A stretch of DNA of 64,000 bases from Macrostomum lignano (Eukaryota). Below are positions 6,001-61,380 of the stretch, one piece after another. Location of the stretch: the NCBI GenBank assembly GCA_002269645.1, contig NIVC01002154.1, positions 84,706 to 148,705 on the forward strand, given 5' to 3'. Made by a program: the position numbers and the translations under genes. Position 1 is the first letter of the stretch. The number at the start of each line of letters is the position of its first letter. A model generated the notes under the pieces. The model saw nothing but the letters and a program-made list of their open reading frames with translations, had not been told where the DNA came from and did not search any database.

Positions 6001-7885
6001 CGGCCTTGTCAGATATCTTTCTAAGAAACAGTTTACCGTCCTACTCAGGCCGGCCTTGTCAGATATCTTTCTAAGAAACAGTTTACCGTCCTACTCAGGG
6101 CCGGCCTTGTCAGATATCTTTCTAAGAAACAGTTTACCGTCCTACTCAGGGCCGGCCTTGTCAGATATCTTTCTAAGAAACAGTTTACCGTCCTACTCAG
6201 GCCGGCCTTGTCAGATATCTTTCTAAGAAACAGTTTACCGTCCTACTCAGGGCCGGCCTTGTCAGATATCTTTCTAAGAAACAGTTTACCGTCCTACTCA
6301 GGGCCGGCCTTGTCAGATATCTTTCTAAGAAACAGTTTACCGTCCTACTCAGGGCCGGCCTTGTCAGATATCTTTCTAAGAAACAGTTTACCGTCCTACT
6401 CAGGGCCGGCCTTGTCAGATATCTTTCTAAGAAACAGTTTACCGTCCTACTCAGGGCCGGCCTTGTCAGATATCTTTCTAAGAAACAGTTTACCGTCCTA
6501 CTCAGGCCGGCCTTGTCAGATATCTTTCTAAGAAACAGTTTACCGTCCTACTCAGGGCCGGCCTTGTCAGATATCTTTCTAAGAAACAGTTTACCGTCCT
6601 ACTCAGGGCCGGCCTTGTCAGATATCTTTCTAAGAAACAGTTTACCGTCCTACTCAGGGCCGGCCTTGTCAGATATCTTTCTAAGAAACAGTTTACCGTC
6701 CTACTCAGGGCCGGCCTTGTCAGATATCTTTCTAAGAAACAGTTTACCGTCCTACTCAGGGCCGGCCTTGTCAGATATCTTTCTAAGAAACAGTTTACCG
6801 TCCTACTCAGGGCCGGCCTTGTCAGATATCTTTCTAAGAAACAGTTTACCGTCCTACTCAGGCCGGCCTTGTCAGATATCTTTCTAAGAAACAGTTTACC
6901 GTCCTACTCAGGCCGGCCTTGTCAGATATCTTTCTAAGAAACAGTTTACCGTCCTACTCAGGCCGGCCTTGTCAGATATCTTTCTAAGAAACAGTTTACC
7001 GTCCTACTCAGGGCCGGCCTTGTCAGATATCTTTCTAAGAAACAGTTTACCGTCCTACTCAGGGCCGGCCTTGTCAGATATCTTTCTAAGAAACAGTTTA
7101 CCGTCCTACTCAGGGCCGGCCTTGTCAGATATCTTTCTAAGAAACAGTTTACCGTCCTACTCAGGCCGGCCTTGTCAGATATCTTTCTAAGAAACAGTTT
7201 ACCGTCCTACTCAGGCGGCCTTGTCAGATATCTTTCTAAGAAACAGTTTACCGTCCTACTCAGGCCGGCCTTGTCAGATATCTTTCTAAGAAACAGTTTA
7301 CCGTCCTACTCAGGCCGGCCTTGTCAGATATCTTTCTAAGAAACAGTTTACCGTCCTACTCAGGCCGGCCTTGTCAGATATCTTTCTAAGAAACAGTTTA
7401 CCGTCCTACTCAGGCCGGCCTTGTCAGATATCTTTCTAAGAAACAGTTTACCGTCCTACTCAGGCCGGCCTTGTCAGATATCTTTCTAAGAAACAGTTTA
7501 CCGTCCTCTCAGGCCGGCCTTGTCAGATATCTTTCTAAGAAACAGTTTACCGTCCTACTCAGGCCGGCCTTGTCAGATATCTTTCTAAGAAACAGTTTAC
7601 CGTCCTACTCAGGGCCGGCCTTGTCAGATATCTTTCTAAGAAACAGTTTACCGTCCTACTCAGGGGGCCTTGTCAGATATCTCTAAGAAGTTTACGTCCT
7701 ACTCAGGCCGGCTTGTCAGATATCTTTCTAAGAAACAGTTTACCGTCCTACTCAGGCCGGCCTTGTCAGATATCTTTCTAAGAAACAGTTTACCGTCCTG
7801 CTCAGGCCGGCCTTGTCAGATATCTTTCTAAGAAACAGTTTACCGTCCTGCTCAGGCCGGCCTTGTCAGATATCTTTCTAAGAAA
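1..7885. repeat. 51-bp satellite array (~155 units; truncated by window start)
   Basis: Unit AGATATCTTTCTAAGAAACAGTTTACCGTCCTACTCAGGGCCGGCCTTGTC is repeated perfectly to ~4620. After that, 50-bp (GGG>GG) and other variants increase toward 7885. Confidence 0.99.
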
Positions 7886-8902: not shown

Positions 8903-9855
8903 TGATGTGTTCCTTATTACCAGACTTTCTCTGTAATCAAGAAACAATCACTTCTAGCTCTTAGCTAGGCAACCCAGTTATCAATGAAGGTACTGCTTAT
9001 CTTGATTCCGGTGAGATCTCGTCTGTAGTCTCCTGCGTCAGTAGTTCTCTCAGTTGATCTGGTAGATCAGCGCCTTGGTTCTTCAGTTGCTCTGGTCCTG
9101 GTTCTTCTGTACTTCCGATGAAGTTACTTCGGCCGGTATCCGCAGTCAGGACCAATCAGAGGCCTCGTATCAACAATGGGATCCCTGCGCCGAACTGCGG
9201 TTTCACTTAAGCCTTCTCCTTCTAGCAGTGCCTCCATGCACTCTAGGTATTGCTCCGGTAATCTCTAATAGATCCTCTAAGATTATTAAGGTAGTCCTTC
9301 GGCGACTACAGCCAATGGGTCTCAAATGGACTCAAGAGTCTCAACAGACTCCAACACTAAAAACAATAGTGAGTCGACTCAACAACTGGCGCAAATGAGC
9401 AAGGCTTACCGCGACAACTCGACCGAGTCTCGATTGACTAGGCGATCAGGAGGTCTCTCTAAGGACTTCCTCTTCGGAGCGCTCCTCTTCCGTGGGAGTA
9501 TGACTCCGGTACCGCTAATTGGACGCTTGTATTTATAGACGATTTTGCAGGCCAAAAATAGTAACATGACTCATGGGTTGCGCTAAAAATAGTAACATGA
9601 CTCATTGCGGCTATTATTAGTAACATGATTCATTCTGATGCTATAAATAGTAACATGATTCACTTTGCTGCTATAAATAGTAACATGAATCATCCTGCTG
9701 CTATAAATAGTAACATGATTCATCCGCTAAAAATAGTAACATGAATCATCTTTAAAGTTGCATGCATGTTCATGCGCATGCATGCACTAGCTTACTTATA
9801 GCAGAATTCTATGATTAACTATTCTACTTCTTTCTGTGGGAGGTAGAACATTACA
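8903..9855 (-). mobile_element. Solo LTR (953 bp, probably Gypsy-like)
   Basis: TG...CA termini with imperfect inverted ends (TGATGTGTTC / TGTAATGTTC). 4-bp TSD AAAT at 8899-8902 and 9856-9859. Minus-strand TATAAATA at 9530-9537, preceded by a tandem enhancer-like array. Confidence 0.75.
9552..9750. promoter_or_regulatory. 7-unit MEF2/AP-1-like array in putative LTR U3 (duplicated at ~12132-12330)
   Basis: Units are CTA(A/T)4TAG-TAACA-TGA(C/T/A)TCA (first unit CCA...) separated by 4-9 nt variable spacers. Confidence 0.55.
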
Positions 9856-11224: not shown

Positions 11225-13817
11225 GGAGCCAGATTTGATTCTGATTGATTTTTGCTAATAAAGTTTCTATTAGCCCAGTCCTGGAACTTTTCTGACACAC
11301 CTCGTAGCTCAGGTTTACTGCCAGTTTGTAGTTATGGCTCCAGGATTCTGTCTTTGGACTGTCTTTTGTAAAGACTGATTCTGTTTACAGACTGTAGCTA
11401 AGGCCATGGGATTCTGTTTAAAAACTGTACATCCGCATATTCGTTATTTCGATTGCGAACTACACGGTAAATTGATGTGTTCCTTATTACCAGACTTTCT
11501 CTGTAATCAAGAAACAATCACTTCTAGCTCTTAGCTAGGCAACCCAGTTATCAATGAAGGTACTGCTTATCTTGATTCCGGTGAGATCTCGTCTGTAGTC
11601 TCCTGCGTCAGTAGTTCTCTCAGTTGATCTGGTAGATCAGGCGCCTTGGTTCTTCAGTTGCTCTGGTCCTGGTTCTTCTTGTACTTCCGATGAAGTTACT
11701 TCCGGCCGGTATCCGCAGTCAGGACCAATCAGAGGCCTCGTATCAACAATGGGATCCCTGCGCCCAACTGCGGTTTCACTTAAGCCTTCTCCTTCTAGCA
11801 GTGCCTCCATGCACTCTAGGTATTGCTCCGGTAATCTCTAATAGATCCTCTAAGATTTATTAAGGTAGTCCTTCGGGCGACTACAGCCAATGGAGTCTCA
11901 AATGGACTCAAGAGTCTCAACAGACTCCAACACTATAACAATAGTGAGTCGACTCAACAACTGGCGCAAATGAGCAAGGCTTACCGCGACAACTCGACCG
12001 AGTCTCGATTGACTAGGCGATCAGGAGGTCTCTCTAAGGACTTCCTCTTCGGAACGCTCCTCTTCCGTGGGGAGTATGACTCCGGTACCGCTAATTGGAC
12101 CGCTTGTATTTATAGACGATTTTGCAGGCCAAAAATAGTAACATGACTCATGGGTTGCGCTAAAAATAGTAACATGACTCATTGCGGCTATTATTAGTAA
12201 CATGATTCATTCTGATGCTATAAATAGTAACATGATTCACTTTGCTGCTATAAATAGTAACATGAATCATCCTGCTGCTATAAATAGTAACATGATTCAT
12301 CCGCTAAAAATAGTAACATGAATCATCTTTAAAGTTTGCATGCATGTTTGCATGCGCATGCATGCACTAGCTTACTTATAGCAGAATTCTATGATTAACT
12401 ATTCTACTTCTTTCTGTGGGAGGTAGAACATTACAAAATGCTGTCCTCGGCCTCCCTGCTCTGTCAGGTCTCAATGTTTGCGGAGGCCTGGAAGCTGCAC
12501 GCGCTCCGTCAAGCCGGCGACAGAAGCAACCCGATTGCCAGGCCGCGCAAGGGCACCCTGCGCCGGGCGCACATGTTGACTTCGACACCACCGCCTCCGA
12601 CGCTGACGACAACCTTGGCTGATGAGGTCGGTGGTGAGTTCAGCAGTGCCGTTGATGGCATGAACGGTCTGTCAAATCCGGGAGAGCTTCTGATCAGCTC
12701 CAGCCCAAGTCTGGGACGGAAAGCTCCGAACTAACCTACACGCTTGCTCACCCGATTGTATCAGAATTGAGTTTTTCTGCTTTTCCTATTAGCATGTCAA
12801 TTTTGGCATGTCAGCCTTGAAGCTTCTTTTACTTTTTAAGCGTTTTTTAATTTAGTGTACATGCAATTATTTCAGGGTGTTATGAATTCTTTCTTAATTG
12901 TTCGCTTCTGTAGCCTATCCGTTAGTTTGGTTCTATTCATATTGTTTACATGCTCGTACATGCGAAAGCGGGTGGGATACTCATATGATGCAATTATTCA
13001 ATGAAATATACGTAGCTGGTTCTAACAATATTCATTGTGAGCACGAGATTCTACCAATAAAGAAATTTACTGAATGCATGTAAGTACCCTTTGTCCTGCA
13101 GATAATTGGCCGCATACATCAGAGTAAAACATTAAATCTTCAAGCAAAATATTTTACTGGCTGTGAAAGATGTTGTTCGATACTTTTTTGTGCTAAATTT
13201 ACTATGAAGAATATTATAGAAATTAGATAGAGCTATCGGTTCATGTACATAAATGTACATCGACATGTACGAGCGTACATGTACATGTACGGAAGTACAA
13301 TCTATGGGATCCAACCGTGAATCAAGAGCCTGGCTTGTCAATTTGGCAGTGAGTTTAACTGTATAACTACCAGGATTCCGCCTGAACATTTTTCACTGCG
13401 CCGGAACGGAACAGGGCATGAAATTCAACAAAACGGGTTAACTTTTTGTTGCGCACTCCTTGCCAGCCCTCTGGACCCCAGGGTAGTCCGAAGACGCAGT
13501 GGAGAGGCGAGCGCCACCCATTCCGCTAGCCCTCTAATCCCGTTGAGGTATTAAAAAATTCTGCCAGAAGGTCGGATTTTTCTCATACTCGTATACAAGC
13601 GCTATATATAGATCATCTACTCAATCCCAAGCAACAGGTACGCGCGTTTTACGCGCATTTTTTGGTAATTCTGTACGCGCGTAAGCGAACGCACAAAATA
13701 CGCGCCTTTTGTAACAGAAAATACGCTGTAATAACGCAATGCTAACTGCAGACTGGTACAGGAACAGGACTAACCATACATGTACATATATGTAGGTTCC
13801 GCGGATTCGTTTATTCA
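11225..13817. repeat. Tandem segmental duplication, copy 2 (~2.59 kb)
   Basis: Matches copy 1 with many single-base indels and a few substitutions. Includes a second mariner right TIR at 11276-11304. Confidence 0.95.
11473..12435 (-). mobile_element. Solo LTR, duplicated copy
   Basis: Same termini and AAAT flanks as 8903-9855. Minus-strand AATAAA at 11856-11861. Confidence 0.75.
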
Positions 13818-22163: not shown

Positions 22164-22647
22164 GTGATGTCGGACACGGAGCTGGCCGACATCGTGGCCA
22201 GCCTCTTGAAGAAGATATTCAAAGAGATCCAGGAGGAGCACCGCGAGGCCTTCGTCCGCGTCTGGCTGGACAGCGGCGACGACTCCCGCTGCGTGCTGAC
22301 GCTGCCGGACGGCAAAGGCAAGATGAAGCGAATCGATGGCCTGCGCGGCTCCGACAAGGTGTGGCGCCTGGACACCCTGGTGGCGATCCTGTTCCACGGC
22401 GTGCCCATGGACAGCACGGACACCGGACTGCTGGTGCACCGCTGCGAGGACGAGCTGTGCATCAACCCGAGGCACTTCAAGTTCCAGTGCAGCCCGGCTA
22501 TGATGGCCGTCACCATGGAGATGCTGCGGCTCAGCGGCTACCGGATCTCGCCGCCGGAGCCGGGGGTCGGCACCGCGGAGGAGCAGCTGCGGTTCTTCCA
22601 GTTCACCTCGCCCTTCCCAGTAGAGTTCATTCGCAACGAGATGAACG
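22164..22647 (+). CDS. NFI: NFI-like exon encoding the MH1-like DNA-binding/dimerisation core
   Basis: CVLTLPDGKGKMKRIDGLRGSDKVWRLDTLVAILFHGVPMDSTD matches NFI [44 protein letters not shown]. CCTAG acceptor, GTGAGA donor (phase 1). Confidence 0.93.
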
Positions 22648-22656
22648 GTGAGAGGC

Positions 22657-22735
22657 CGGTGGGTGGCGCGCGGGTTAAACGGGTTCAGTCCGGTGCTAAA
22701 CCGAAAGGTCAGAGGTTCGAATCTCGTTGCATTAC
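22657..22735 (+). mobile_element. Degenerate tRNA-like/SINE head in intron
   Basis: A-box-like TGGCGCGCGGGTT and B-box GGTTCGAATC at tRNA-like spacing. No intact cloverleaf. Confidence 0.4.
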
Positions 22736-23225
22736 CCAGAAGTCTGTTGGCCTTCAAGAACAAGTTTAAAAGCGAATCGAACCCAAACCTCTATCCCAGG
22801 ATTCCCAGGAGCACCTTCTTTCTGTTCATACCTCTGTCTTATAAAATTACTTAAATAAGCAAAATGCTCATGTTTGCCTGAAGTGTTCCTTGCCAGTGAA
22901 TCGGCACTGGTATCAAGTTTTTGTGCAGCATTTTAACAATCTTACCTGACACATTTGCGTTTTTTCACCTCTGGAATCGAGTCAAAGGCACGCGGCCGAT
23001 TGCTGAGGTAAGTGCGCCGAAACCCAAACCCAGTGTTGAGTCAAGCTCAACCTACGAGTAATCCCATGCATTACGTACTCAAGCTTAATCCCCCACTGCT
23101 CAGTATAAGCTTCAGCTTGGGTTTATTGTTAGAAGCCGAAAAATTTTCTACATGATTTGGTGATAAACTAGCTAATGATCTTTTAGCTGCGATAAATTGT
23201 CAGAAAATTTTGCATTATTTAGGGC

Positions 23226-36565: not shown

Positions 36566-38534
36566 TTTCGTAAAAGTACTGGACCGTACAGCATTGTTTT
36601 CGACAAAGAGTACCGTAAGACCTACTATATGTATATTGTACAGCGTACTTGCTTGTGCATGTACATTTACAATGTAAATGTAAAGCTACTTTTATCACGG
36701 CCATGCATTGAGAAACAATGCATCTATCGAACCAAGAAACACTGTATTTCTCACCTTTAACCCACTATATTTACCTACTGTCATTTCCCTGTTTGCACGC
36801 GTGCATAGCTATGTACTGTTACTGCGGATTTACTGGAATCATGCTCAACAAATCATGGTCCTACATGTACATGTACAGTGTAATTGTTGCAGGAATTCGG
36901 GATCTCACGGAACCTGGTTTTTACTATTTAATTAGACTAAAAATCATTCAGTAATCGAAAATTTCTTACATCTGACCTGGTAATGCCTATATTATCTGTA
37001 CTTAATTTATAGTCAAGTAGTTCAGTGACAGACAAACTGTTAATGTATATTGCACGTTTATACATGTAGTAGAATCAGCTATAAGTACTTATTGCATAAC
37101 TTTATCTAAAACTTGATCCTCAATGCTAATGTTCTTTAATTACAGAACTCTTATTCCCCTTTTTGCTTGACTCCGAGATCACATACGAGCGTAAAATCGT
37201 CCCAACTACTCACATTAGTCCACATTACTCACTTCTAGACGTAAATGTGCGCGCATACACCAGAATGTTAGATTTCTTTTCTTAGTTTTAATATCATAAA
37301 TTTTATCTGTAATAATATTAGTATCCTCAACCAAAGAATAGATAAAGAATATTATTTATCTTTAATAATGAATAATATACACCAATGCTGATTTGTTTAA
37401 AGCTGCGCACTTAAATACCATGGATACCAAACAGCTATTTTAACGTATAAAATTCATAACTTTTAACACCACGTGTCATAACCCATATACTAAAATTAGC
37501 TATCTAAAACTCGTGAATAGAGCAAAGAATTAAAATAATATAATTTATACAAGACAGAAGCATGATCCACTACACATTGATTCTATTGGTTTGATTTTTA
37601 TTCTATTTAAGGATGATACATATATTTGCAACAATGCTTAAAACGATGGACCGGACTGAAACACTCGGAAAGGCCGAAAAATCCTTAAAACGAGAAAGTC
37701 TAAGCTAAGTGATCAGTGTTTCAGTGACTAGCGAGATTGCAAGAAGTTTTGATTTTAACTAAAATGCCAGTATTTAATGGAGTTCTTTTCAGAAAATTAT
37801 AGCCACATTGGCACAATATTTCATTGTCAAATATTTGAGTGAATCTCTGGTATAATAAAATATACTCATATTCTCGTTTTCAATACTTCTCCCTTTATCA
37901 ATTTACTCTGGATAAATATTCACTCACAAATAGAGATTTGAAGAGATCTTCTTAGGGACTGTCAAACAGGCAATATACCAACCAATAAAAATCTAATCAG
38001 TTAAATTGTTAGCCAAACTTAAATCTAATGCATTTTATATTTATACTTGTTTATTTATTTACAAAGGAAATTTATCTGGACTTTTACAAAGGAATTTCAA
38101 ACAAAATTGAACAGATATTGTTTGTTTACTGAATTAGTGTTCAATTTTACCCATTTATTAATAATAATTTATTAACTAATTTATTAATAATAATTAGTTT
38201 GTATTTTTATGAAATCTTTTAGACTTCAAAGCTTTATATTTTGCACAGGGTGGACCATGAACCAATGATGGGTAAAAATAATCCAAAAAACCACCTGAGT
38301 TGCAGAGTTTTCTGAAACAAAAATAGACTTTTTGCATCTACGTTTTTATCACATTGACTATCATCAATGATTTATTGATACATGTAAAAAAATGAATTCG
38401 AGATAAATACAATGGTGACTTAGCATTACGAGCTAGATGAACCATTTGATGTATGTATTGAGCTGGACTTAAAAATATTGAGTAGGATTTTTGTTACCAT
38501 GCGGTCCGCAAACTGGCTCAGTTGCAGCCCCGCC

Positions 38535-39086
38535 ATGCCCAACGTGAAGCTGCTCAGCAGCGACAATGAGATCATCGAGCTGGACTCGGACGCTCTGCGG
38601 CTCTCCGAGCGACTCCGCCGGCTGGCCGACTACCCCGGCGGCGATGGCCACGAGATCCCCGTGCCGAACGTCACCTCGGCGACGCTACGTCGCGTGGCCA
38701 CCTGGTGCGCGCACCATCGGGACGACCCGGCGCCGCCCGAGGACGACGAGAACCGCCTGCAGCTCGGCAGCGTCGCTAGCGGCGTCTACGGCAGTGGCGG
38801 GGGCGGCGCGGTCTTCAGCGTGTGGGACAGCGAGTTCCTCAACCTGGAGCCCGTCTGCCTGTTCGAGCTGCTGCAGGCCGCCGCCTACCTAGACGTCCGC
38901 GGCCTCGTTGACGCCTGCTGTCTGGCCGTTGCCGATATGATCCGCGGCCGCGGCCCGGAAGACATTCGCAAAACCTTCAACATCAAGTGCGACCTGACGC
39001 CGCAGGAGGAGGAGCAGGTCAGGCAGGAGCTCGCCTGGTGCCACGACCCGCCGGAGGAGAAAAGCTCTGACTCACTGCCTGACTGA
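38535..39086 (+). CDS. SKP1: Skp1-family protein (intronless, divergent paralog, 183 aa)
   Basis: MPNVKLLSSDNEII, IPVPNVTSATLRRVATWCAHHRDDP, WDSEFL, LFELLQAAAYLDVRGL and IRKTFNIKCDLTPQEEEQVRQELAWC match the Skp1 POZ and dimerisation domains. Confidence 0.93.
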   Translation: MPNVKLLSSDNEIIELDSDALRLSERLRRLADYPGGDGHEIPVPNVTSATLRRVATWCAHHRDDPAPPEDDENRLQLGSVASGVYGSGGGGAVFSVWDSEFLNLEPVCLFELLQAAAYLDVRGLVDACCLAVADMIRGRGPEDIRKTFNIKCDLTPQEEEQVRQELAWCHDPPEEKSSDSLPD

Positions 39087-47416: not shown

Positions 47417-47636
47417 CAGCAGTTCTCAACCTTTTCTTAGGTGACCCTAATTTATTCACTTGCATTGTTTTTTAATGTTTGCAACCCCCTTTATTATTAA
47501 TATAATGCTTTATATTTATATAATGTCATCATTAAGTATGACATACTTACACTCACACATTTCTTAGTGCTACAACCCCTAGAAAATGGTGATGCAATCC
47601 CACTATGGGTTGCAACCCACAGGTTGAGAACTACTG
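47417..47636. mobile_element. hAT-family MITE (220 bp)
   Basis: 16-bp TIRs CAGCAGTTCTCAACCT / AGGTTGAGAACTACTG (15/16 match) and a perfect 8-bp TSD CATTAAAA at 47409-16 and 47637-44. Confidence 0.9.
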
Positions 47637-48586
47637 CATTAAAACAACAATTCAAATGTTTAAAACAAAAAGGGTACTTTTAAACAAATATTTAAGTTTG
47701 AACAAAAATATCAACTATTAACTACTTTTATCACTAACTATTTTATCAGTTAAAACAACAATTTATATTTATCTTTGTAATAGCAATAATTCAAAAAGTG
47801 CCTACTTCAATATTGACAACAATATTAAAAATCAAAGCTTTAAAGTATTTTAAATCATTTGCCTTTAAATTATAAAATTGCATATATGTTTGTATATTAG
47901 TATTTCTCTTATTAATTCTATATCTATAATTCTATATTTCTATAATAGATTTCTCTATATTATCTATACCTATTAGAATCACTTATTAAGTATATTAATG
48001 AAATTAGTCTATGTATACTTTTAGACTTATTTTATAATTGCTAATATTGTGTAAACAAATATAATTTTATTGCGTTATATAGCCTTAGCATATTTGATAG
48101 CAACTTTAAAGCCTATTTTCGCTATTGGATCATATTTGTTTATTTTAAATTAATAAATATTTTTACTTTGTAATGTGAAAATGATTTTGTATATATACAA
48201 ATTTCTCCTAGAGTATAATATTTTATTGCTGATCAACAATAGATTTATTAAAGTTGTTTATTATTTGAAAGACAAAAATAATGCTTATTGATTCTATGAC
48301 CTAATTGGTAGTTTGTGATTTTTTCACTAAAGCACTAAACCAGCTCTCGAATTGTAGCCAATTTGATGATTTATAGTTTACAAACTGGCAAATATTCAAT
48401 GTAGTTGCATATCTTGTTTTAAAATGATTCCAAGGCAGACCAATACTTAGGTAATCAGGTAGTCTTGGCAATGTTAACTTAGCCTATAGTGTCTGCACAA
48501 CACTCCAGCGCGACACTATTGAGCAGCTTGAGTCACAGCAGCAGCAGTGGCAGCCGGAACTCCCCAGCCCAATCCAGCAGGCCGAC

Positions 48587-49867
48587 ATGACCAGCAGCGA
48601 GAGCGGCCTTAGCGGCCTGGGAGTCTGGCGCCGGTGGAGCATCGGCCTTGTCCCGGACTACCAGCAGTCCTTGGTCAGCCTCTGCTCCGCTGTCCGGCAA
48701 CGGGCCGCCGCGCTGCTCCTGCTGCCCGCTTGGACCGGCGCGCCTTCGGCCGGCCAGGCCTCGCTGTCCGAGTCGCCTTTTCTAGACGGCGAGATCGTCT
48801 ACTCGCGCAACAACGTCTGTGTGCACATCGAGCAGCCGTCCGGCTCGGACACTGTGCACCACCTGGGCTACCTGTGCATCGTCAGCCGCGTGCGGCCGGC
48901 CGGCCACACCGAGTTCCTGCTCAAATGGACGCCCAACGTCAAGCTGTCCAGGCAGATGAGCGCCGAGTCCACCGCCTCCGTGGCGACCGCCTCCGACGCC
49001 TCGGACGCCACCGTCCGGTCGGCGCCGCCGCGGATCCCCGGCTCGGCCGCGCCGCCCGGCGTCTTCCTGTGCAACCTGATGCACTCCGGCTGCGTGCTGG
49101 TCTGCCCCGGTCACGTGATCGTGCGCAGCCCCGAGTCCCAGCTGAAGATCTTCCACTTCCACAGCGGAAGCGGCGGCGGCGGCGGCACGGAGGCCATCGA
49201 GCGCCTGCTGGCCGGACAGCCCGGCTCGTTCCGCTGCCGCCGCCGGCCGCGCTCGCCCTACGCCGAGTTTCACGCCCTCCGCCAGCAGCAACAGCGGCAG
49301 CCGCGGCACTTGCGGATTCTGGAGCAGCCGCTTCATTCTATTCGGGCGGCGAACGACGCTGCGGCGGTGACACCTCGAGAGATTCGCCAGCAGCGGCAGG
49401 AGGCCGGCGGCAACGGGGACGCCGAGAGCGTCGGCAGGCCGACCCGGCTGAACTCGGCGAGCTTTGAAGACCTGGTGAGCATCGAAGGCTTCGTTGAGGA
49501 CCCGACCCAGTTCAAGCGGACGGTGTACCTGTCGGGCGTCGACTCCAGCGTTCGCAGGCAGGTCTGGCCGCTGCTGATCGGCCTGTACCCGTTTGAGAGC
49601 TCAACGGAGCAGCGCTACCAGGTTTACTTGGAGGCCGAGGCCGAGCTGGGCCGCCTGAGACACTCCAGGCACTGCGCGCAGGCGCTGCTGTCTTCGCCGA
49701 CAGCGTCCGGGTCCGCAGCGGCCGCCTCCGTGCTGACCGAAGCTGCTGAGGTCGACTTGAGCGGCCTGCCCGAGCAGCTTCGACTGCGGGAGCTGCTGCT
49801 GGACTTCGCCCACGCCTGCGGGACCTTTGATGAGGCCGCGCCCAGCCTGCTGAGCACCCTGCTGCAG
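48587..49867 (+). CDS. TBC1D16: TBC1D16-like Rab-GAP-domain protein, exon 1
   Basis: LDGEIVYSRNNVCVH...HHLGYLCI...LKWTPN matches the TBC1D16 N-terminus. FKRTVYLSGVDSSVRRQVWPLLIGLYPFESSTEQR marks the TBC start. CAG|GTGAGG donor, phase 0. The frame is also open upstream to ~48490. Confidence 0.88.
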
Positions 49868-49890
49868 GTGAGGGGATTGACTGGCATCAA

Positions 49891-50220
49891 ATAGGATCTA
49901 ACCGGTATCAACTAGGATCTAACCGGTATCATCTAGGATCTAACCTGTATCATCTAGGATCTAACCGGTATCAACTAGGATCTAACCGGTATCATCTAGG
50001 ATCTAACCTGTATCATCTAGGATCTAACCGGTATCATCTAGGATCTAACCTGTATCATCTAGGATCTAACCTGTATCATCTAGGATCTAACCTGTATCAA
50101 TTAGGATCTAACCTGTATCATCTAGGATCTAACCGGTATCATCTAGGATCTAACCGGTATCATCTAGGATCTAACCGGTATCATCTAGGATCTAACCGGT
50201 ATCAACTAGGATCGAACAGG
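49891..50220. repeat. 21-bp minisatellite filling TBC intron 1 (TAGGATCTAACCGGTATCATC)
   Basis: Seen directly. Confidence 0.96.
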
Positions 50221-50254
50221 TAACCTACAACCCAGGAAACGCTCCCTTTCGCAG

Positions 50255-50511
50255 GTTCTGGACGACGACGTGGAAGCCTTCTGCTGCCTCCGCCTGCTGG
50301 TCTCTGACGGCTTCCTGCTGCGCTCTGAGCAGCAGCTTGACTCGGACCTGGCCTGCCTCAGCGAGCTGCTCCGCCTGCTCAAGCCGGAATTCCAGGCCGT
50401 CTACGACCGGCCCGCGGATCTCGGCTTCGCCAGGCGCTGGCTGACCGCCTGCTTCCTCTGGGAGTTCCCGCTGGACGAGGCGCTGGCCGTGTGGGAGGCC
50501 TGCTTCTGCAG
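50255..50511 (+). CDS. TBC1D16: TBC1D16-like exon 2
   Basis: TTTCGCAG acceptor. LSELLRL...FARRWLTACFLWEFPLDEALAVWEAC matches LRELLRL...FCHRWLLLCFKREF..EALRIWEAC. Phase-2 GTGGGT donor. Confidence 0.88.
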
Positions 50512-50552
50512 GTGGGTGACTCTGGTGCCGTTTTTAGTAGTTTTTTGCAGAT

Positions 50553-51133
50553 TATTGACTGCCAGTGACAATTGACTGTCAGTGAAAATTGACTGCCAGT
50601 GACAATTGACTGTCAGTGAAAATTGACTGCCAGTGACAATTGACGGTCAGTGACAATTGACTCTCAGTGACAATTGACTGTCAGTGACAATTGTCTGCCA
50701 GTGACAATTGACTGTCAGTGACAATTGACTGTCAGTGACAATTGACTGTCAGTGACAATTGTCTGTCAGTGACAATTGACGGTCAGTGACAATTGACTCT
50801 CAGTGACAATTGACTGTCAGTGACAATTGTCTGCCAGTGACAATTGTCTGCCAGTGACAATTGACTGTCAGTGACAATTGACTGTCAGTGACAATTGTCT
50901 GTCAGTGACAATTGACTGTCAGTGACAATTCCTGACATTGCTGCCAGTGACAATTGACTGTCAGTGACAATTGACGCCAGTGACAATTGACTTTCAGTGA
51001 CAATTGACTGTTAGTGACAATTGACTGTCAGTGACAATTCCTGACATTGCTGCCAGTGACAATTGACTGTCAGTGACAATTGTCTGTCAGTGACAATTGA
51101 CTGTCAGTGACAATTCCTGACATTGCTACCAGT
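50553..51133. repeat. 17-bp quasi-palindromic minisatellite filling TBC intron 2 (CAGTGACAATTGACTGT)
   Basis: Seen directly. Confidence 0.96.
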
Positions 51134-51159
51134 CAATCCCTGCTGAACTCGCACTGCAG

Positions 51160-51469
51160 GTACGCCACTGCCAGCTTCCAGCTGTTCCTCTGCGCCGCTC
51201 TGATCGACCTGTACGGCGACTTTTGCCTGGAGAAGCGGCTGCCGGCCACCGAGGCCGCCGCCTACTTCGCCCAGCTGTCCGGCGGAGTCGACTCCGACCA
51301 GCTGCTGCGCCGGGCGCGCCAACTTCTGCGCCAATTCCGGCGCCTACAGCGGGTGCCGTGCCGGTTGGCGCCGCTATGCCGTGGCGCGCCGCGCGGCATG
51401 TGGGACTCCTGCCCGGGCCCCGGGCTCGCCTGCCCGCCGGAGCCGCACGACTGCGGACTGCCGCAGTGA
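51160..51469 (+). CDS. TBC1D16: TBC1D16-like exon 3 (terminal)
   Basis: FQLFLCAALIDLYGD...LLRRARQLLRQFRRLQRVPCRL..LC...GMWDS matches the TBC1D16 C-terminus. Joined CDS is 1848 nt (615 aa). Confidence 0.9.
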
Positions 51470-51513
51470 GTCGCCGCGCCGCGCTCGAGCGGCGCCTTGA
51501 AGTGTCGGTCTGG

Positions 51514-51527
51514 GTCGCCATAGCAAC
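51514..51527. promoter_or_regulatory. RFX X-box-like motif GTCGCCATAGCAAC
   Basis: Fits the 14-nt RTHNYYWTRRNRAC consensus. First of a cluster of related sites. Confidence 0.45.
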
Positions 51528-51659
51528 AACTTGCTGACCTTGACAATGATTTTTTACCAAGGAAACGAGTTTGTAATTTTAGCAACAGGTTGTCTACTTT
51601 TGCAATGTGTTGCCTAGCATAGCATGCTTGTCAAAACTTTGAAAACACGTTGTTTACTA

Positions 51660-51925
51660 TAGCAACGGGTTGTTCACCTTAGCAACGGATTGATTACCTT
51701 AGTAATGGGTTGATGGGTTGACCTTAGCAACTGGTTAAATTACCTTAGCAACTGGTTGATTACCTTAGCAACGGGTTGATTACATTAGCAACTGGTTGAT
51801 TATCTTAGCAATGGGTTGATTATCTTAGCAATGGGTTGATTACCTTAGCAACTGGCTGATTACCTTAGCAACTGGTTGATTACCTTAGCAACGAGTTGAT
51901 TACCTTAGCAACTGATTGATAACCT
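51660..51925. repeat. 20-bp minisatellite (TACCTTAGCAACTGGTTGAT)
   Basis: Seen directly. Confidence 0.92.
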
Positions 51926-52746
51926 TTTTATCTTAGCAATGTCTTTCTTAACAAACGCATTTTACCTTAGCTTACCTGGACTATTTTATTATAGCTTGAA
52001 ACAGCATTAAATTAGAGATGAGCGCCGTCACTAAGGTAAACAACAGCTGTTGCGATGTCTGCGTTTTTCTTTTTTAGCCATTTTTTACAAAAGAATTCGA
52101 GATCTCTAGGTATTCAATACCTGTTAGCTGCGTGAGGACTTGATCAAATCCGCTAGCTTTTTTATTCCTGATAGTCACTAAAACAAAAACGGGTTTTTTT
52201 CCGTGAAGTTTGAATTCGAATTTTATAGTTAATTTTTTGTTGCTCTTGGCTGTTGTGTCCCGAATTAGTTGAATTTGTAATTCTGTCTCTTAGCTGTTCT
52301 TATCTCTGCATGGCTAGTTACATTTTTAAGATAAATCAAATTTTATTAGGAATCAATTTTTTAGTAACAAAGACTGCCTGCTCCGTCTAGGCGGATGCGG
52401 ACTGTTCAGAGTCTGACTATTTTTTGTTTTAATCAACTCGAACCTGCCCTGTCGCACAGCCGGCCCCCTTTTTTGGGGCCTTTTTTTGCCGCAAGCTTTT
52501 TTGTGTACTTCTAGTCTGGTCCATTTTAACTGTCCATTCAGATTTATTTAGCAAGGCATCAACTACATTGTTCGCTATTCTCTCGCGGCGGCTCTGACTG
52601 TGTGTCTCTGGTGCCAAAGCAGCTCCGCATCTTGCTTTTTTCTGCTGCCGTTCTAGTGCGCTCGTGCCCCAACTTCTGGTATCCCGGCATGCTGATCTTT
52701 GAGTAACTCCAACTCCCAGGAGACTGGCGTGTAGCGGCGGATTGTA

Positions 52747-59094: not shown

Positions 59095-59646
59095 ATGGAA
59101 GACCACGACAGCTTTCTAACTGCAGGTGGCAGTGGCTTCGGCGGCCATGTTGCCATGGCAACTGACCTCCTGCGCCGTCTGCCTGGCCGCCAGCAGCAGC
59201 TGCGCAGCCTCGACGATCTTGGCGACGTCGTTGAGTTTTTCAGCGAGGTTTTCGCGCTCACCTGCCCGGAGGCCGCGACTTCCGTGCTTGACGAAGGCGG
59301 CGGCGCTGACGGTCTCGATAAACTGCGCGGCATCATCGACAGTCTGGCGGATGACGTCATCGGAGTGTCGCTGTCGCACATCCGGCCGAAGGACGTGCTG
59401 GCCGGGACCGGACCGCCGTCGGCAACCTGGTGGAGATTTTCCACGGCTTGGCCGAGTTCGCGCCCGACCTGGAGGCCGCCGCTGAGCCGCCGAGGACGTC
59501 AGCCATCGAGGCGGCGGTCGATGCGCGACCGCGTCCGCGTGCGGCTGCTGACGAGTTTCGGCCGGCAACGCCGCCGAGGCCGTCGGAGAATTCGACGCGG
59601 CAGCAGACATCAGCGGCGGCTGCGCGTATCGACTATGATAACCCTG
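59095..59646 (+). CDS. CEP95: CEP95 (CCDC45)-like centrosomal protein, exon 1 (frameshift at ~59404-59406)
   Basis: [25 protein letters not shown] + [18 protein letters not shown] matches CEP95 [43 protein letters not shown], if one G is added to a GGG run. GTTAGC donor at 59647. Confidence 0.8.
59149..59162. promoter_or_regulatory. Perfect palindromic RFX X-box GTTGCCATGGCAAC inside CEP95 exon 1
   Basis: Exact canonical X-box. A second near-match GGCGCCATGGCAAC lies at 58381-58394. Confidence 0.5.
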
Positions 59647-59651
59647 GTTAG

Positions 59652-60200
<549 letters not shown>

Positions 60201-60206
60201 TCGCAG

Positions 60207-60693
60207 GCCCAACTAAATCGCCAACCCGCAGCCCCGGAGATGCCGCCCTCGTTGCGCCGCTCCTACGAGCAGCTGCACCGGCTGGCGGACCGGACGCTGC
60301 GCCTGTCCAGGGAGGCGGTCACCGCTCCGGCCCCGGCAGCCAGCCGACTGGAGGACGACTCGGAGGACAGCGACGCCGGAGACGAATTTCAGCGCGGCCA
60401 GCAGTTGCGTTGGCGTCGGGCTTCGGAGGGCGCCGAGTTCAGAAATGATAACACAGAGAGTGATGAAGCTCCAGACGATGCCGCTTCAGCTTCCGACGGT
60501 GGAGATTCCGGGGTTGGCGGCGGCGGCGGTGAGGGTGGCGGCCGAGGCGGCCTCTGCTGCGGCCTACCGGCCACATCGCCTCGCACCAGGCTTGCGGGCT
60601 ACGCGGAGGAGCACGCGGTCCGGGTGGAGGAGGAGCGCCTGCGGCTGCGGCGGCTGCAGCGCGAGCGACAACTGCGGCTGGCTGCCGAGGCTG
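60207..60693 (+). CDS. CEP95: CEP95-like exon 2 (boundaries tentative)
   Basis: TGTCGCAG acceptor. Frame AQLNRQ...[21 protein letters not shown]...[15 protein letters not shown]. Probable GTGGGC donor at 60694 (phase 1); alternative GTTCGT at 60711. Confidence 0.55.
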
Positions 60694-60789
60694 GTGGGCG
60701 GGCCGACGGGGTTCGTGAAGCTGCTGTGGCTGCGTGCTGGGCGATGGGACTGAGAAATGAAAGACTGGGAGTCTCAGCCTTGGTGATGC

Positions 60790-61380
60790 AGAGCTGAGAG
60801 GCTGGACGAGGTGGACTGAGCGTCTGGGAGATGAAGGACCAAGAGTCTGGGAGATGAAGTGCCGAGAGTCTGGGAGATGAAGGACCGCGAGAGTCTGGAA
60901 GATGGAGTACCGAGAGTCTGGGAGATGAAGGACCGAGAGACTGGGAGATGAAGGACCGAAAGTCTGAGAGATGAAGGACCGAGACTGTGGGAGATGAAGT
61001 ACAGTGAGTCTGGGAGATGAAGGACCGCGAGAGTCTGGGAGATGGAGTACCGAGAGTCTAAGAGATGAAGGACCGAGAGTCTGGGAGATGATGGACCGAG
61101 AGTCTGGGAGATGAAGGACCGAGAGTCTGGGAGATGATGGACCGAGAGTCTGGGAGATGATGGACCGAGAGTCTGGGAGATGAAGGACCGAGAGTCTGAG
61201 AGATGAAGGACCGAGACTGTGGGAGATGAAGTACAGTGAGTCTGGGAGATGGAGTACCCAGAGTCTGGGAGATGGAGTACCGAGAGTCTGGGAGATGGAG
61301 TACCGAGAGTCTGGGAGATGCAGTGCCGAGAGTCTGGGAGGTGAATGACCGAGAGACTGGAACTGAGAGTGGACTGAGAG
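60790..61380. repeat. 23-bp intronic minisatellite (GAGAGTCTGGGAGATGAAGGACC)
   Basis: Seen directly. Confidence 0.94.

What the first reader, a model, noticed from the sequence alone, without database searches (positions are those of the whole stretch)
49560..50330. TBC1D16-like protein lacks both catalytic fingers: candidate pseudo-GAP
Seen: the gene is intact (3 exons, canonical splice sites, 615 aa, no frameshifts), and its N- and C-terminal TBC1D16 motifs are well conserved. However, where TBC GAPs have IxxDxxR (TBC1D16: VDKDVVRTDR) it reads VLTEAAEVD, and where they have YxQGM it reads GTFDEAAP. Established: TBC Rab-GAP catalysis needs both the Arg finger (IxxDxxR) and the Gln finger (YxQ). 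Inference: a catalytically dead but maintained paralog acting as a Rab effector, scaffold or dominant negative. My alignment across this region is by eye.
Basis: partly seen in the sequence, partly recalled or inferred. Interest (0 to 1): 0.7.

Follow-up and report, generated by a model that had tools for sequence, protein, structure and literature searches.

The report
Finger-less TBC1D16 paralog in a flatworm
The flatworm Macrostomum lignano has a second, fast-evolving copy of the Rab-GTPase switch-off enzyme TBC1D16 that keeps the enzyme's fold but has lost both catalytic residues, so it is probably a non-enzymatic "pseudo-GAP", a kind of protein already known from other organisms.

Summary
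Window 48587-51469 (+) is an intact 3-exon, 615-aa gene. In an alignment with 33 TBC1D16-family proteins, every homolog keeps the xDxxRTDR and YxQ motifs. The window protein reads VLTEAAEVDL and TFDEAA instead (catalytic Arg->Glu388, Gln->Glu416), and a missed exon cannot restore them.

The window comes from Macrostomum lignano contig NIVC01002154.1. The same assembly holds a canonical paralog, BOX15_Mlig019128g1 (42% identical), with both fingers intact. The two are sisters (NJ bootstrap 200/200), and the window branch is about twice as long.

Losses of family-conserved residues cluster in the catalytic segment (15/19 versus 28/80 elsewhere, p=6e-4). The PH-like N-domain, TBC fold (AlphaFold model, TM 0.83-0.88 to TBC1D15) and Cys-rich tail are retained. 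GC3 is 0.89. Two further copies of the locus (93.6-97.5% identical upstream DNA) keep the gene's start.

Caveats:
- The submitted annotation calls no gene over the gene's first 500 bp, and the protein database holds no matching protein.
- I have no expression data.
- I could not reach the finger region in the other copies.

Best reading: a catalytically dead, probably maintained TBC1D16-derived pseudo-GAP. This is a lineage-specific new member of a known kind (compare TBC1D7, TBC1D23). Interest is modest.

The parts
48587..51469 (+). Whole coding region of the TBC1D16-like paralog (615 aa; ATG 48587, TGA 51467-51469). Corresponds to NIVC01002154.1 133292-136174.
   Evidence: Spliced translation. 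Best relative is the M. lignano TBC1D16-like protein P0001, E 3.7e-87. Contig identified.
48587..49867 (+). Exon 1 (aa 1-427). Holds the PH-like domain, the linker, the N-terminal half of the TBC domain and both degenerate finger motifs.
   Evidence: ORF 48587-49894. Donor CAG|GTGAGG at 49867/49868.
48776..49216 (+). N-terminal PH-like domain (aa ~64-210). This is the segment best conserved with the canonical paralog (65/117 aligned residues identical).
   Evidence: Pfam PF12068 is sub-threshold (15.9 bits against a cutoff of 22.4). Invariant DGEIVYS-NNVCVH and LKWTPN motifs. AlphaFold predicts a beta-sandwich followed by a helix. Identity per domain.
49730..49759 (+). Remnant of the Arg-finger motif. 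VLTEAAEVDL (aa 382-391) stands where the family has V(D/E)KDVVRTDR. The catalytic Arg is Glu388 (49748-49750).
49823..49840 (+). Remnant of the Gln-finger motif. TFDEAA (aa 413-418) stands where the family has GYxQGM. The catalytic Gln is Glu416 (49832-49834).
49868..50254 (+). Intron 1, filled by 15.8 copies of a 21-bp minisatellite (49892-50222). The exon-1 reading frame hits TAG at 49892.
   Evidence: The alignment to P0001 is gap-free across the junction Q427|V428.
50255..50512 (+). Exon 2 (aa 428-513), central TBC helices including the conserved RW motif (R488, W489).
50513..51160 (+). Intron 2, filled by ~34 copies of a 17-bp minisatellite (50554-51115).
   Evidence: The alignment is gap-free across R513|Y514.
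51161..51469 (+). Exon 3 (aa 514-615). Holds the C-terminal TBC helices (to about 51346) and the TBC1D16-type Cys-rich tail PC-L--LC---GMWDS--P--CP--PH-C (51356-51454).
   Evidence: family consensus IPCTL..LC..CGPG.WDS.

Best explanation
Window 48587-51469 encodes a lineage-specific duplicate of the Macrostomum lignano TBC1D16-type Rab-GAP.

Shown:
- It is sister to the canonical M. lignano TBC1D16-like gene and has evolved about twice as fast.
- It keeps the N-terminal PH-like domain, a complete predicted TBC fold and the family's Cys-rich C-terminal tail.
- Its catalytic segment has decayed. The Arg finger is Glu388, the Gln finger is Glu416, most flanking motif residues are replaced, and the loop between the motifs is ~7 residues shorter.

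From established knowledge: TBC GAPs hydrolyse Rab-bound GTP through the dual Arg/Gln-finger mechanism, and mutating either finger abolishes activity. This protein therefore cannot work as a conventional Rab-GAP.

Inferred:
- The gene is still under coding constraint, so it is a pseudo-enzyme rather than a dead gene.
- It acts non-catalytically through the retained PH-like domain and TBC surface. It could be a Rab- or membrane-binding adaptor, or a competitor that shields a Rab from the canonical GAP.
- Two acidic side chains at the finger positions may instead prevent docking at the nucleotide pocket. In that case function would rest on the PH-like domain and the tail.
For: Gene and family:
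- Intact 615-codon ORF over three exons with canonical GT-AG borders. Only 2 of 20000 composition-matched shuffles are stop-free.
- Family assignment rests on phmmer against 1.84 billion representatives. The best hit is M. lignano P0001 (E 3.7e-87, 42% identity). The next hits are proteins named TBC1D16 in sea urchins, scorpions, a tunicate and hagfish.
- Pfam RabGAP-TBC scores 39.4 bits against a cutoff of 25.2, but matches only profile positions 92-211. P0001 matches positions 3-209 with 109.6 bits.

Finger loss:
- Seen against 33 full-length and 112 region-covering relatives.
- Residues 361-398 hold only Arg361, at the edge, and there is no Gln at or near the finger position.

Paralog status:
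- The window is 100% identical to NIVC01002154.1.
- The canonical copy, with VDRDVSRADR and GYVQAM, is on NIVC01001409.1 of the same assembly.
- The two group together in 200/200 NJ bootstraps, with branch lengths 0.76 and 0.36.
- Tajima relative-rate counts are about 60 versus 29 unique changes (p 1e-2 to 3e-5).

Signs of constraint:
- Losses of family-conserved residues are concentrated in aa 382-420 (15/19 lost versus 28/80 elsewhere, Fisher p=6e-4). P0001 shows no comparable concentration (8/19 versus 16/80, p=0.046).
- GC1/2/3 are 0.69/0.51/0.89, against 0.43 in the introns and 0.27 upstream.
- The AlphaFold model has pLDDT mostly above 85-90 across the TBC domain. Foldseek gives TMt 0.83-0.88 and rmsd 2.1 A to the TBC1D15 GAP domains 5tub and 5tuc.
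- Two further copies of the locus in the assembly (L002 97.5% and L004 93.6% identical in the upstream 1 kb) keep the ATG and the first 58 and 42 codons.

Literature:
- Only 10 of 18 Toxoplasma gondii TBC proteins keep a recognisable dual-finger site.
- A finger mutant (R74A) binds its Rab in yeast two-hybrid where the wild type does not (PMC11101121).
Against: - The submitted annotation calls no gene over the part of the locus I could list (window 48587-49086). No protein matching this gene exists among ~15 billion database proteins. There is therefore no sign that it was seen in the transcriptome-based annotation.
- I have no RNA-seq evidence.
- The branch is twice as long as its paralog's, and the segment aa 365-395 is Ala/Ser-rich. 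Both also fit general relaxation of constraint.
- GC-rich sequence has few stop codons, so ORF length is weaker evidence than usual. Other frames here carry ORFs of 184-277 aa.
- dN/dS against the paralog is uninformative because dS is about 1 and saturated.
- I could not read the finger region in the other two copies. Current purifying selection is therefore untested.
- Glu at both finger positions could abolish Rab binding altogether.
Confidence: 0.58

Rival explanations
1. It is a young, untranscribed or decaying pseudogene. The duplicate lost its function, the active site decayed first by chance, and the ORF is still open only because too little time has passed and the GC-rich sequence rarely creates stop codons.
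For: - The submitted annotation calls no gene over window 48587-49086, and the protein is absent from the database.
- The branch is twice as long as the paralog's.
- The window protein keeps only 56 of 99 family-conserved columns, against 75 for the paralog.
- Long spurious ORFs occur in other frames of the same GC-rich DNA.
Against: - There is no stop or frameshift in 1845 nt, and both introns excise precisely in frame.
- Stop-free shuffles number 2 of 20000.
- Strong codon-position periodicity, with GC3 of 0.89 exceeding the canonical paralog's 0.79.
- Losses are non-uniform: active site 79% versus 35% elsewhere.
- The divergence from the paralog (d about 1.1 substitutions per site) is far too large to have accumulated neutrally without breaking the frame.
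- Copies of the locus differ by 2.5-6.4% in the upstream 1 kb and carry indels there, yet this copy is unbroken. My rough estimate is about a 6% chance of that under neutrality, inferred from the indel and substitution counts.
Confidence: 0.3
2. It is still an active GAP that uses non-canonical catalytic residues, for example another Arg or Gln supplied from a different structural element, or the Rab's own Gln.
For: The TBC fold is intact, and the RW motif and many helix residues are conserved. From my own knowledge, not checked here, a few TBC proteins lacking one canonical finger have been reported with residual or disputed activity.
Against: - Both fingers are replaced by acidic residues.
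- Six of the seven family-conserved columns in the Arg-finger motif and all six in the Gln-finger motif are replaced.
- Residues 361-398 hold only Arg361, at the N-terminal edge, and there is no nearby Gln.
- All other family members examined keep the fingers.
- Single finger mutations abolish function in other TBC GAPs (PMC11101121).
Confidence: 0.04
3. It is an artefact. Either a gene-model or assembly error creates an apparent loss (a missed exon, a mis-joined contig or long-read errors), or it is simply the species' only TBC1D16 ortholog.
For: The assembly is highly repetitive and the window ends at a contig end.
Against: - Both motifs lie inside one uninterrupted ORF between well-aligned blocks. 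The changes are about 15 substitutions plus an in-frame deletion, not indel noise.
- The alignment is contiguous across both junctions.
- A canonical paralog is present in the same assembly.
- Three copies of the locus exist.
Confidence: 0.03

Closest known systems
TBC1D16 (TBC1D15/16/17-Gyp7 group of Rab-GAPs), specifically M. lignano BOX15_Mlig019128g1 (PAA68243.1)
   Same: - Same domain order: PH-like N-domain, linker, TBC domain and Cys-rich C-terminal tail.
- 42% identity over the full length.
- Sister relationship in 200/200 NJ bootstraps.
- Predicted TBC fold superposes on TBC1D15 at 2.1 A.
   Different: - Both catalytic fingers and most motif residues are replaced (R->E388, Q->E416).
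- The loop between the motifs is ~7 residues shorter.
- The branch is twice as long.
- None of its intron positions matches the paralog's. It lacks the intron right after the YxQ codon that P0001 shares with the Styela gene.
Natural non-catalytic TBC proteins (pseudo-GAPs): TBC1D7 (TSC complex subunit), TBC1D23, and several Toxoplasma TBC proteins such as TgTBC16
   Same: A TBC fold without the dual-finger active site. These proteins work as adaptors or complex subunits rather than enzymes. TBC1D7 and TBC1D23 structures appear among the fold matches. The T. gondii tally is 10 of 18 with fingers (PMC11101121).
   Different: It has an independent origin. This one derives from a recent, lineage-specific duplication of TBC1D16 and is not orthologous to TBC1D7 or TBC1D23, which give far weaker fold matches (E 1e-5 versus 1e-15). 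Its partners and function are unknown.
Engineered finger mutants of TBC GAPs (R->A/K, Q->A) used as Rab traps or dominant negatives
   Same: Loss of the finger residues in an otherwise intact TBC domain. Such mutants can bind Rab-GTP more stably than the wild type.
   Different: Here both fingers are charge-reversed to Glu and the surrounding motif is rewritten. Retention of Rab binding cannot be assumed.

Membership tests
TBC / RabGAP domain superfamily (Pfam PF00566) | Sequence match to the TBC profile above the curated threshold | tested here: met
   39.4 bits against a cutoff of 25.2, E 7e-10. Only the C-terminal half matches (profile 92-211 of 216). The paralog P0001 matches profile 3-209 at 109.6 bits.
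TBC / RabGAP domain superfamily (Pfam PF00566) | All-helical TBC fold | tested here: met
   AlphaFold2 model with pLDDT mostly above 85 over aa 290-590. Foldseek against TBC1D15 5tub/5tuc gives E 7e-16, TMt 0.83-0.88 and rmsd 2.1 A. It also matches Gyp1, TBC1D22 and TBC1D20.
Catalytically competent TBC Rab-GAPs | Arg finger in the IxxDxxR motif | tested here: not met
   VLTEAAEVDL stands opposite V(D/E)KDVVRTDR, with D->E385 and R->E388. Residues 361-398 hold only Arg361, at the edge.
Catalytically competent TBC Rab-GAPs | Gln finger in the YxQ motif | tested here: not met
   TFDEAA stands opposite GYxQGM, with Y->F414 and Q->E416. The nearest Gln is Q427, inside the next helix.
Catalytically competent TBC Rab-GAPs | Measured stimulation of Rab GTP hydrolysis | not testable with these tools
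   Needs recombinant protein and a GTPase assay.
TBC1D16 subfamily | Closest relatives are TBC1D16 proteins; monophyly with a TBC1D16-type gene | tested here: met
   Top representative hits are named TBC1D16 (Lytechinus, Strongylocentrotus, Centruroides, Styela, Myxine). It is sister to M. lignano P0001 in 200/200 bootstraps.
TBC1D16 subfamily | N-terminal PH-like domain (PF12068) and conserved C-terminal Cys-rich tail | tested here: met
   - The family motifs DGE---KNNVCVH, GYL and W-PN are present.
- 56% identity to P0001 across aa 62-200.
- The tail PC-L--LC---GMWDS---P--C is present.
- The Pfam PF12068 score itself is sub-threshold (15.9 against 22.4).
Maintained pseudo-enzyme (pseudo-GAP) as opposed to pseudogene | Evidence of expression and of purifying selection after loss of the catalytic residues | tested here: inconclusive
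   - Indirect support: intact ORF, GC3 of 0.89, localised loss (p=6e-4), retained fold, and three copies of the locus with intact gene starts.
- The annotation calls no gene over the gene's start, there are no transcripts to consult, dS against the paralog is saturated, and the finger region of the other copies is out of reach.
Processed pseudogene / retrocopy | Intronless copy with frame disruptions | tested here: not met
   It has two precisely excisable GT-AG introns and no disruption. An old retrocopy that later gained introns is not excluded, because neither intron position matches P0001 or Styela.

The most novel reading that the evidence does not exclude
M. lignano may maintain a matched pair: a canonical TBC1D16 GAP and a charge-reversed (Arg->Glu, Gln->Glu) finger-less sister. 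The sister would occupy the same Rab or membrane site through its conserved PH-like domain and TBC surface and act as a natural anti-GAP or dominant negative, tuning endosomal Rab lifetime. That would be a recent, datable birth of a pseudo-GAP by duplication, kept in several copies of the locus.
Probability: 0.2. Interest if true: 0.5.

Novelty: new member of a known kind. Interest (0 to 1): 0.3.

Why it matters
Pseudo-enzymes among Rab regulators are known, but their origins are mostly ancient and obscure. Here the catalytic parent and the finger-less daughter sit in the same genome as clear sisters, in a flatworm in which, to my knowledge, RNAi and transgenesis are established. If the gene is expressed, it offers a tractable case of how a GAP turns into a non-catalytic regulator and what the TBC scaffold does without its fingers. 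If it is not expressed, it is an ordinary decaying duplicate. It also marks a real gene that appears to be missing from the current M. lignano annotation.

Tried and rejected
1. Exact-sequence look-ups of the spliced protein, the exon-1 ORF and three neighbouring ORFs found nothing in the collection.

2. My first assignment of the window to contig NIVC01002735.1 was wrong. That contig (L002) holds a ~97% identical copy of the locus. The window is NIVC01002154.1.

3. I tried to reach the rest of the other gene copies. L002 and L004 stop after 58 and 42 codons because of the 10-kb flank limit. I tried to anchor from the downstream putative gene (59095-60797), but it has no database match. dN/dS among the copies could therefore not be computed. 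The 175 nt available show 1 non-synonymous and 1 synonymous difference (L002), and the 126 nt of L004 show 2 non-synonymous and 1 synonymous. That is too few to interpret.

4. Nei-Gojobori dN/dS against the canonical paralog gives pS 0.56, dS about 1.0 and dN 0.59. It is saturated and biased by GC3, so I did not use it.

5. I looked for orthologs of the finger-less copy. None of 147 relatives is clearly closer to it than to P0001; one short fragment, P0081, scores about equally against both.

6. The missed-exon idea is rejected. One frame of the 21-bp repeat in intron 1 is open (my own reading of the repeat unit), but it is not the exon-1 frame. The alignment has no gap at the junction, and the motifs lie upstream in exon 1.

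7. The idea that minisatellite-filled introns are special to this gene is rejected. All three introns of the canonical paralog are also minisatellite arrays.

8. Retrocopy origin is left open. Intron positions differ from P0001 and Styela, which is not decisive.

9. The first Biopython bootstrap script timed out. I redid it with my own NJ code.
Full report
**Observation**

Reading 47500-52500 shows a GC-rich block inside AT-rich, repeat-laden DNA. Joining 48587-49867, 50255-50512 and 51161-51469 at canonical GT..AG borders gives 1848 nt, which is 615 codons plus TGA, with no frameshift.

VLTEAAEVDL is aa 382-391 (nt 49730-49759) and TFDEAA is aa 413-418 (nt 49823-49840).

**Family**

- Pfam finds RabGAP-TBC above threshold (39.4 bits against 25.2), but only over the C-terminal half of the profile (positions 92-211). 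PH_RBD scores below threshold.
- phmmer against PDB sequences finds the TBC1D15 and TBC1D17 GAP domains (E 1e-17 to 1e-14). It aligns IEKDVNRTDR and GYVQGM to the two degenerate stretches.
- An exhaustive phmmer search of 1.84 billion representatives gives 710 hits. The best is P0001 from Macrostomum lignano (E 3.7e-87, 42% identity, full length). All others are at most 37% identical among the full-length hits (short fragments reach 46%).
- Cluster names identify the next hits as TBC1D16 of sea urchins, scorpions, Styela and hagfish.

**The finger loss is real**

I aligned the protein with 33 full-length relatives using MAFFT (A2).
- All 33 carry the (D/E)KDV-RTDR-type Arg-finger motif, one with the final Arg replaced. 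All 33 carry YxQ, followed by GM in all but P0001.
- The canonical M. lignano paralog has VDRDVSRADR and GYVQAM.
- The window protein has D->E385, R->E388, R->L391, Y->F414, Q->E416, G->A417 and M->A418, plus a loop about 7 residues shorter between the motifs.

The HMMER pairwise alignment places the first motif 3 residues differently but again supplies no Arg. Independently of any alignment, aa 361-398 hold only Arg361 at the N-terminal edge. The only Gln in aa 405-432 is Q427, inside the next helix.

Of 112 relatives among the best 148 that cover the region, only the window protein is substituted at both positions. The other eight flagged sequences each miss one motif and look like gene-model errors such as unspliced introns or truncations.

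A missed exon cannot rescue the motifs. Both lie in exon 1 between well-aligned blocks, and the alignment to P0001 is gap-free across both junctions. Intron 1 is a 21-bp minisatellite whose exon-1 frame stops at 49892.

**Where the window comes from, and the canonical copy**

A Skp1-like ORF in the window (38526-39086) led to the source.
- Locus L003 is 100% identical to window 28526-49086. It is M. lignano assembly GCA_002269645.1, contig NIVC01002154.1, positions 113231-133791.
- Record position therefore equals window position plus 84705, and the window ends at the contig end.
- P0001 (BOX15_Mlig019128g1, PAA68243.1) lies on NIVC01001409.1 of the same assembly.

One exists, so the window gene is a paralog and not an ortholog that lost its fingers.

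**Relationship and rate**

- On 442 well-occupied columns, the window protein and P0001 are sisters in 200/200 NJ bootstraps. Branch lengths are 0.76 and 0.36 after a shared stem of 0.41.
- Tajima-type counts give about 60 changes unique to the window protein against about 29 unique to P0001 (p between 0.03 and 3e-5, depending on the outgroup).
- None of 147 relatives is clearly closer to the window protein than to P0001; one short fragment scores about equally. No ortholog of the finger-less copy is visible in the database.

The duplication is therefore lineage-specific but old, with d about 1.1 substitutions per site.

**Live gene or pseudogene?**

Evidence for constraint:
- The ORF is intact, and only 2 of 20000 composition-matched shuffles are stop-free.
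- GC1/2/3 are 0.69/0.51/0.89, with sharp drops to 0.43 in the introns and 0.27 upstream. GC3 is even higher than the canonical paralog's 0.79.
- Losses of family-conserved residues are concentrated in the catalytic segment: 15 of 19 conserved columns lost in aa 382-420 against 28 of 80 elsewhere (Fisher p=6e-4). P0001 shows no comparable concentration (8 of 19 against 16 of 80, p=0.046).
- The PH-like domain is the part best conserved between the paralogs (65/117 identical), followed by the C-terminal TBC half (76/153).
- The AlphaFold2 model (mean pLDDT 75, TBC domain mostly above 85-95) superposes on the TBC1D15 GAP domains with TMt 0.83-0.88 and rmsd 2.1 A.
- The assembly holds two more copies of the locus: L002 (97.5% identical in the upstream 1 kb) and L004 (93.6% identical there), both on NIVC01002735.1. 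Both retain the ATG and the first 58 and 42 codons, with 1-2 amino-acid changes. M. lignano is a recent hidden polyploid (PMC5704211, PMC10733133), which accounts for such copies.

Evidence against:
- The submitted annotation calls no gene over window 48587-49086.
- No database protein corresponds to this gene.
- I have no transcript data.
- dS against the paralog is saturated.
- I could not reach the finger region of the other copies. The 10-kb flank limit stopped me, and the downstream anchor gene has no database entry.

I therefore put roughly 0.6 on a maintained pseudo-GAP and roughly 0.3 on a young or unexpressed pseudogene.

**Mechanism**

From established knowledge, TBC GAPs insert an Arg (IxxDxxR) and a Gln (YxQ) in trans into the Rab nucleotide pocket. 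Mutating either abolishes function (for example TgTBC9 R74A and Q101A; PMC11101121). With Glu at both positions and the motifs rewritten, conventional GAP activity is excluded for practical purposes.

What remains is a PH-like domain, a TBC scaffold and a Cys-rich tail. The most likely role is non-catalytic binding to a Rab, a membrane or a partner protein, possibly competing with the canonical paralog. Finger mutants can bind Rabs more stably than the wild type. Two acidic fingers could equally repel the phosphates and block docking. This step is inference.

**Comparison with known systems**

The protein belongs to the TBC superfamily and the TBC1D16 subfamily by sequence, domain order and fold. 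It fails both defining features of catalytically competent TBC GAPs.

Functionally it resembles the known natural pseudo-GAPs. These include TBC1D7 and TBC1D23, both among the fold matches, and the eight Toxoplasma TBC proteins without a recognisable dual-finger site. It arose independently from a TBC1D16 duplication. It is therefore a new member of a known kind.

**Gene structure side note**

- P0001's gene has introns after aa 112, after Q385 (directly after the YxQ codon) and after R449.
- The Styela TBC1D16 gene shares the intron after YxQ.
- The window gene lacks that intron. Its own introns lie 11 codons downstream (Q427|V428) and 2 codons upstream of another Styela intron (R513|Y514).

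This fits either long independent intron turnover or an old retrocopy that later gained introns. It does not bear on the main conclusion.

Minisatellite-filled introns are common to both paralogs, so they are a habit of this genome rather than a feature of this gene.

**Verdict**

Interest is modest (0.3). This is a clean, datable example of pseudo-GAP birth if the gene is expressed, and an ordinary decaying duplicate if it is not.

Noticed in passing
window 1-7885: About 155 tandem copies of a 51-bp satellite at 99% identity fill the first 7.9 kb of the window. They also create long spurious repeat ORFs.
   Followed up: no
whole window (30 TRF rows); L001 10378-13834: Nearly every intron and intergenic stretch carries its own minisatellite array (periods 13-59 bp). 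Both introns of the finger-less gene and all three introns of its canonical paralog consist almost wholly of such arrays.
   Followed up: partly
window 38526-39086 (+); L002, L004: An intronless, annotated Skp1-like gene (Skp1_POZ plus Skp1 domains, with a Gly-rich insert) is present in three copies in the assembly. It is only 65% identical to another M. lignano Skp1 protein. Two of the copies lie in opposite orientation on the same contig, NIVC01002735.1.
   Followed up: partly
window 59095-60797 (+): A GC-rich putative two-exon gene is interrupted by a (CTGT)n microsatellite (59652-60199). The reading frame appears to change near 59410. It has no homolog in the protein database and a weak DUF2967 match.
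   Followed up: partly
window 22164-22769 (+): An ORF has a weak, sub-threshold MH1 (SMAD N-terminal) domain match (E 1.7e-4, 22.2 bits against a cutoff of 25).
   Followed up: no
window 9554-9753 and 12131-12330: Two tandem-repeat arrays give identical TRF rows 2577 bp apart, which implies a direct duplication of about 2.6 kb.
   Followed up: no
window 48587-51469 vs L001 10001-14304 and L005: The paralogs share no intron positions. The canonical copy keeps an intron directly after the catalytic Gln codon that the tunicate Styela also has. The finger-less copy lacks it and has introns at nearby but different positions.
   Followed up: partly
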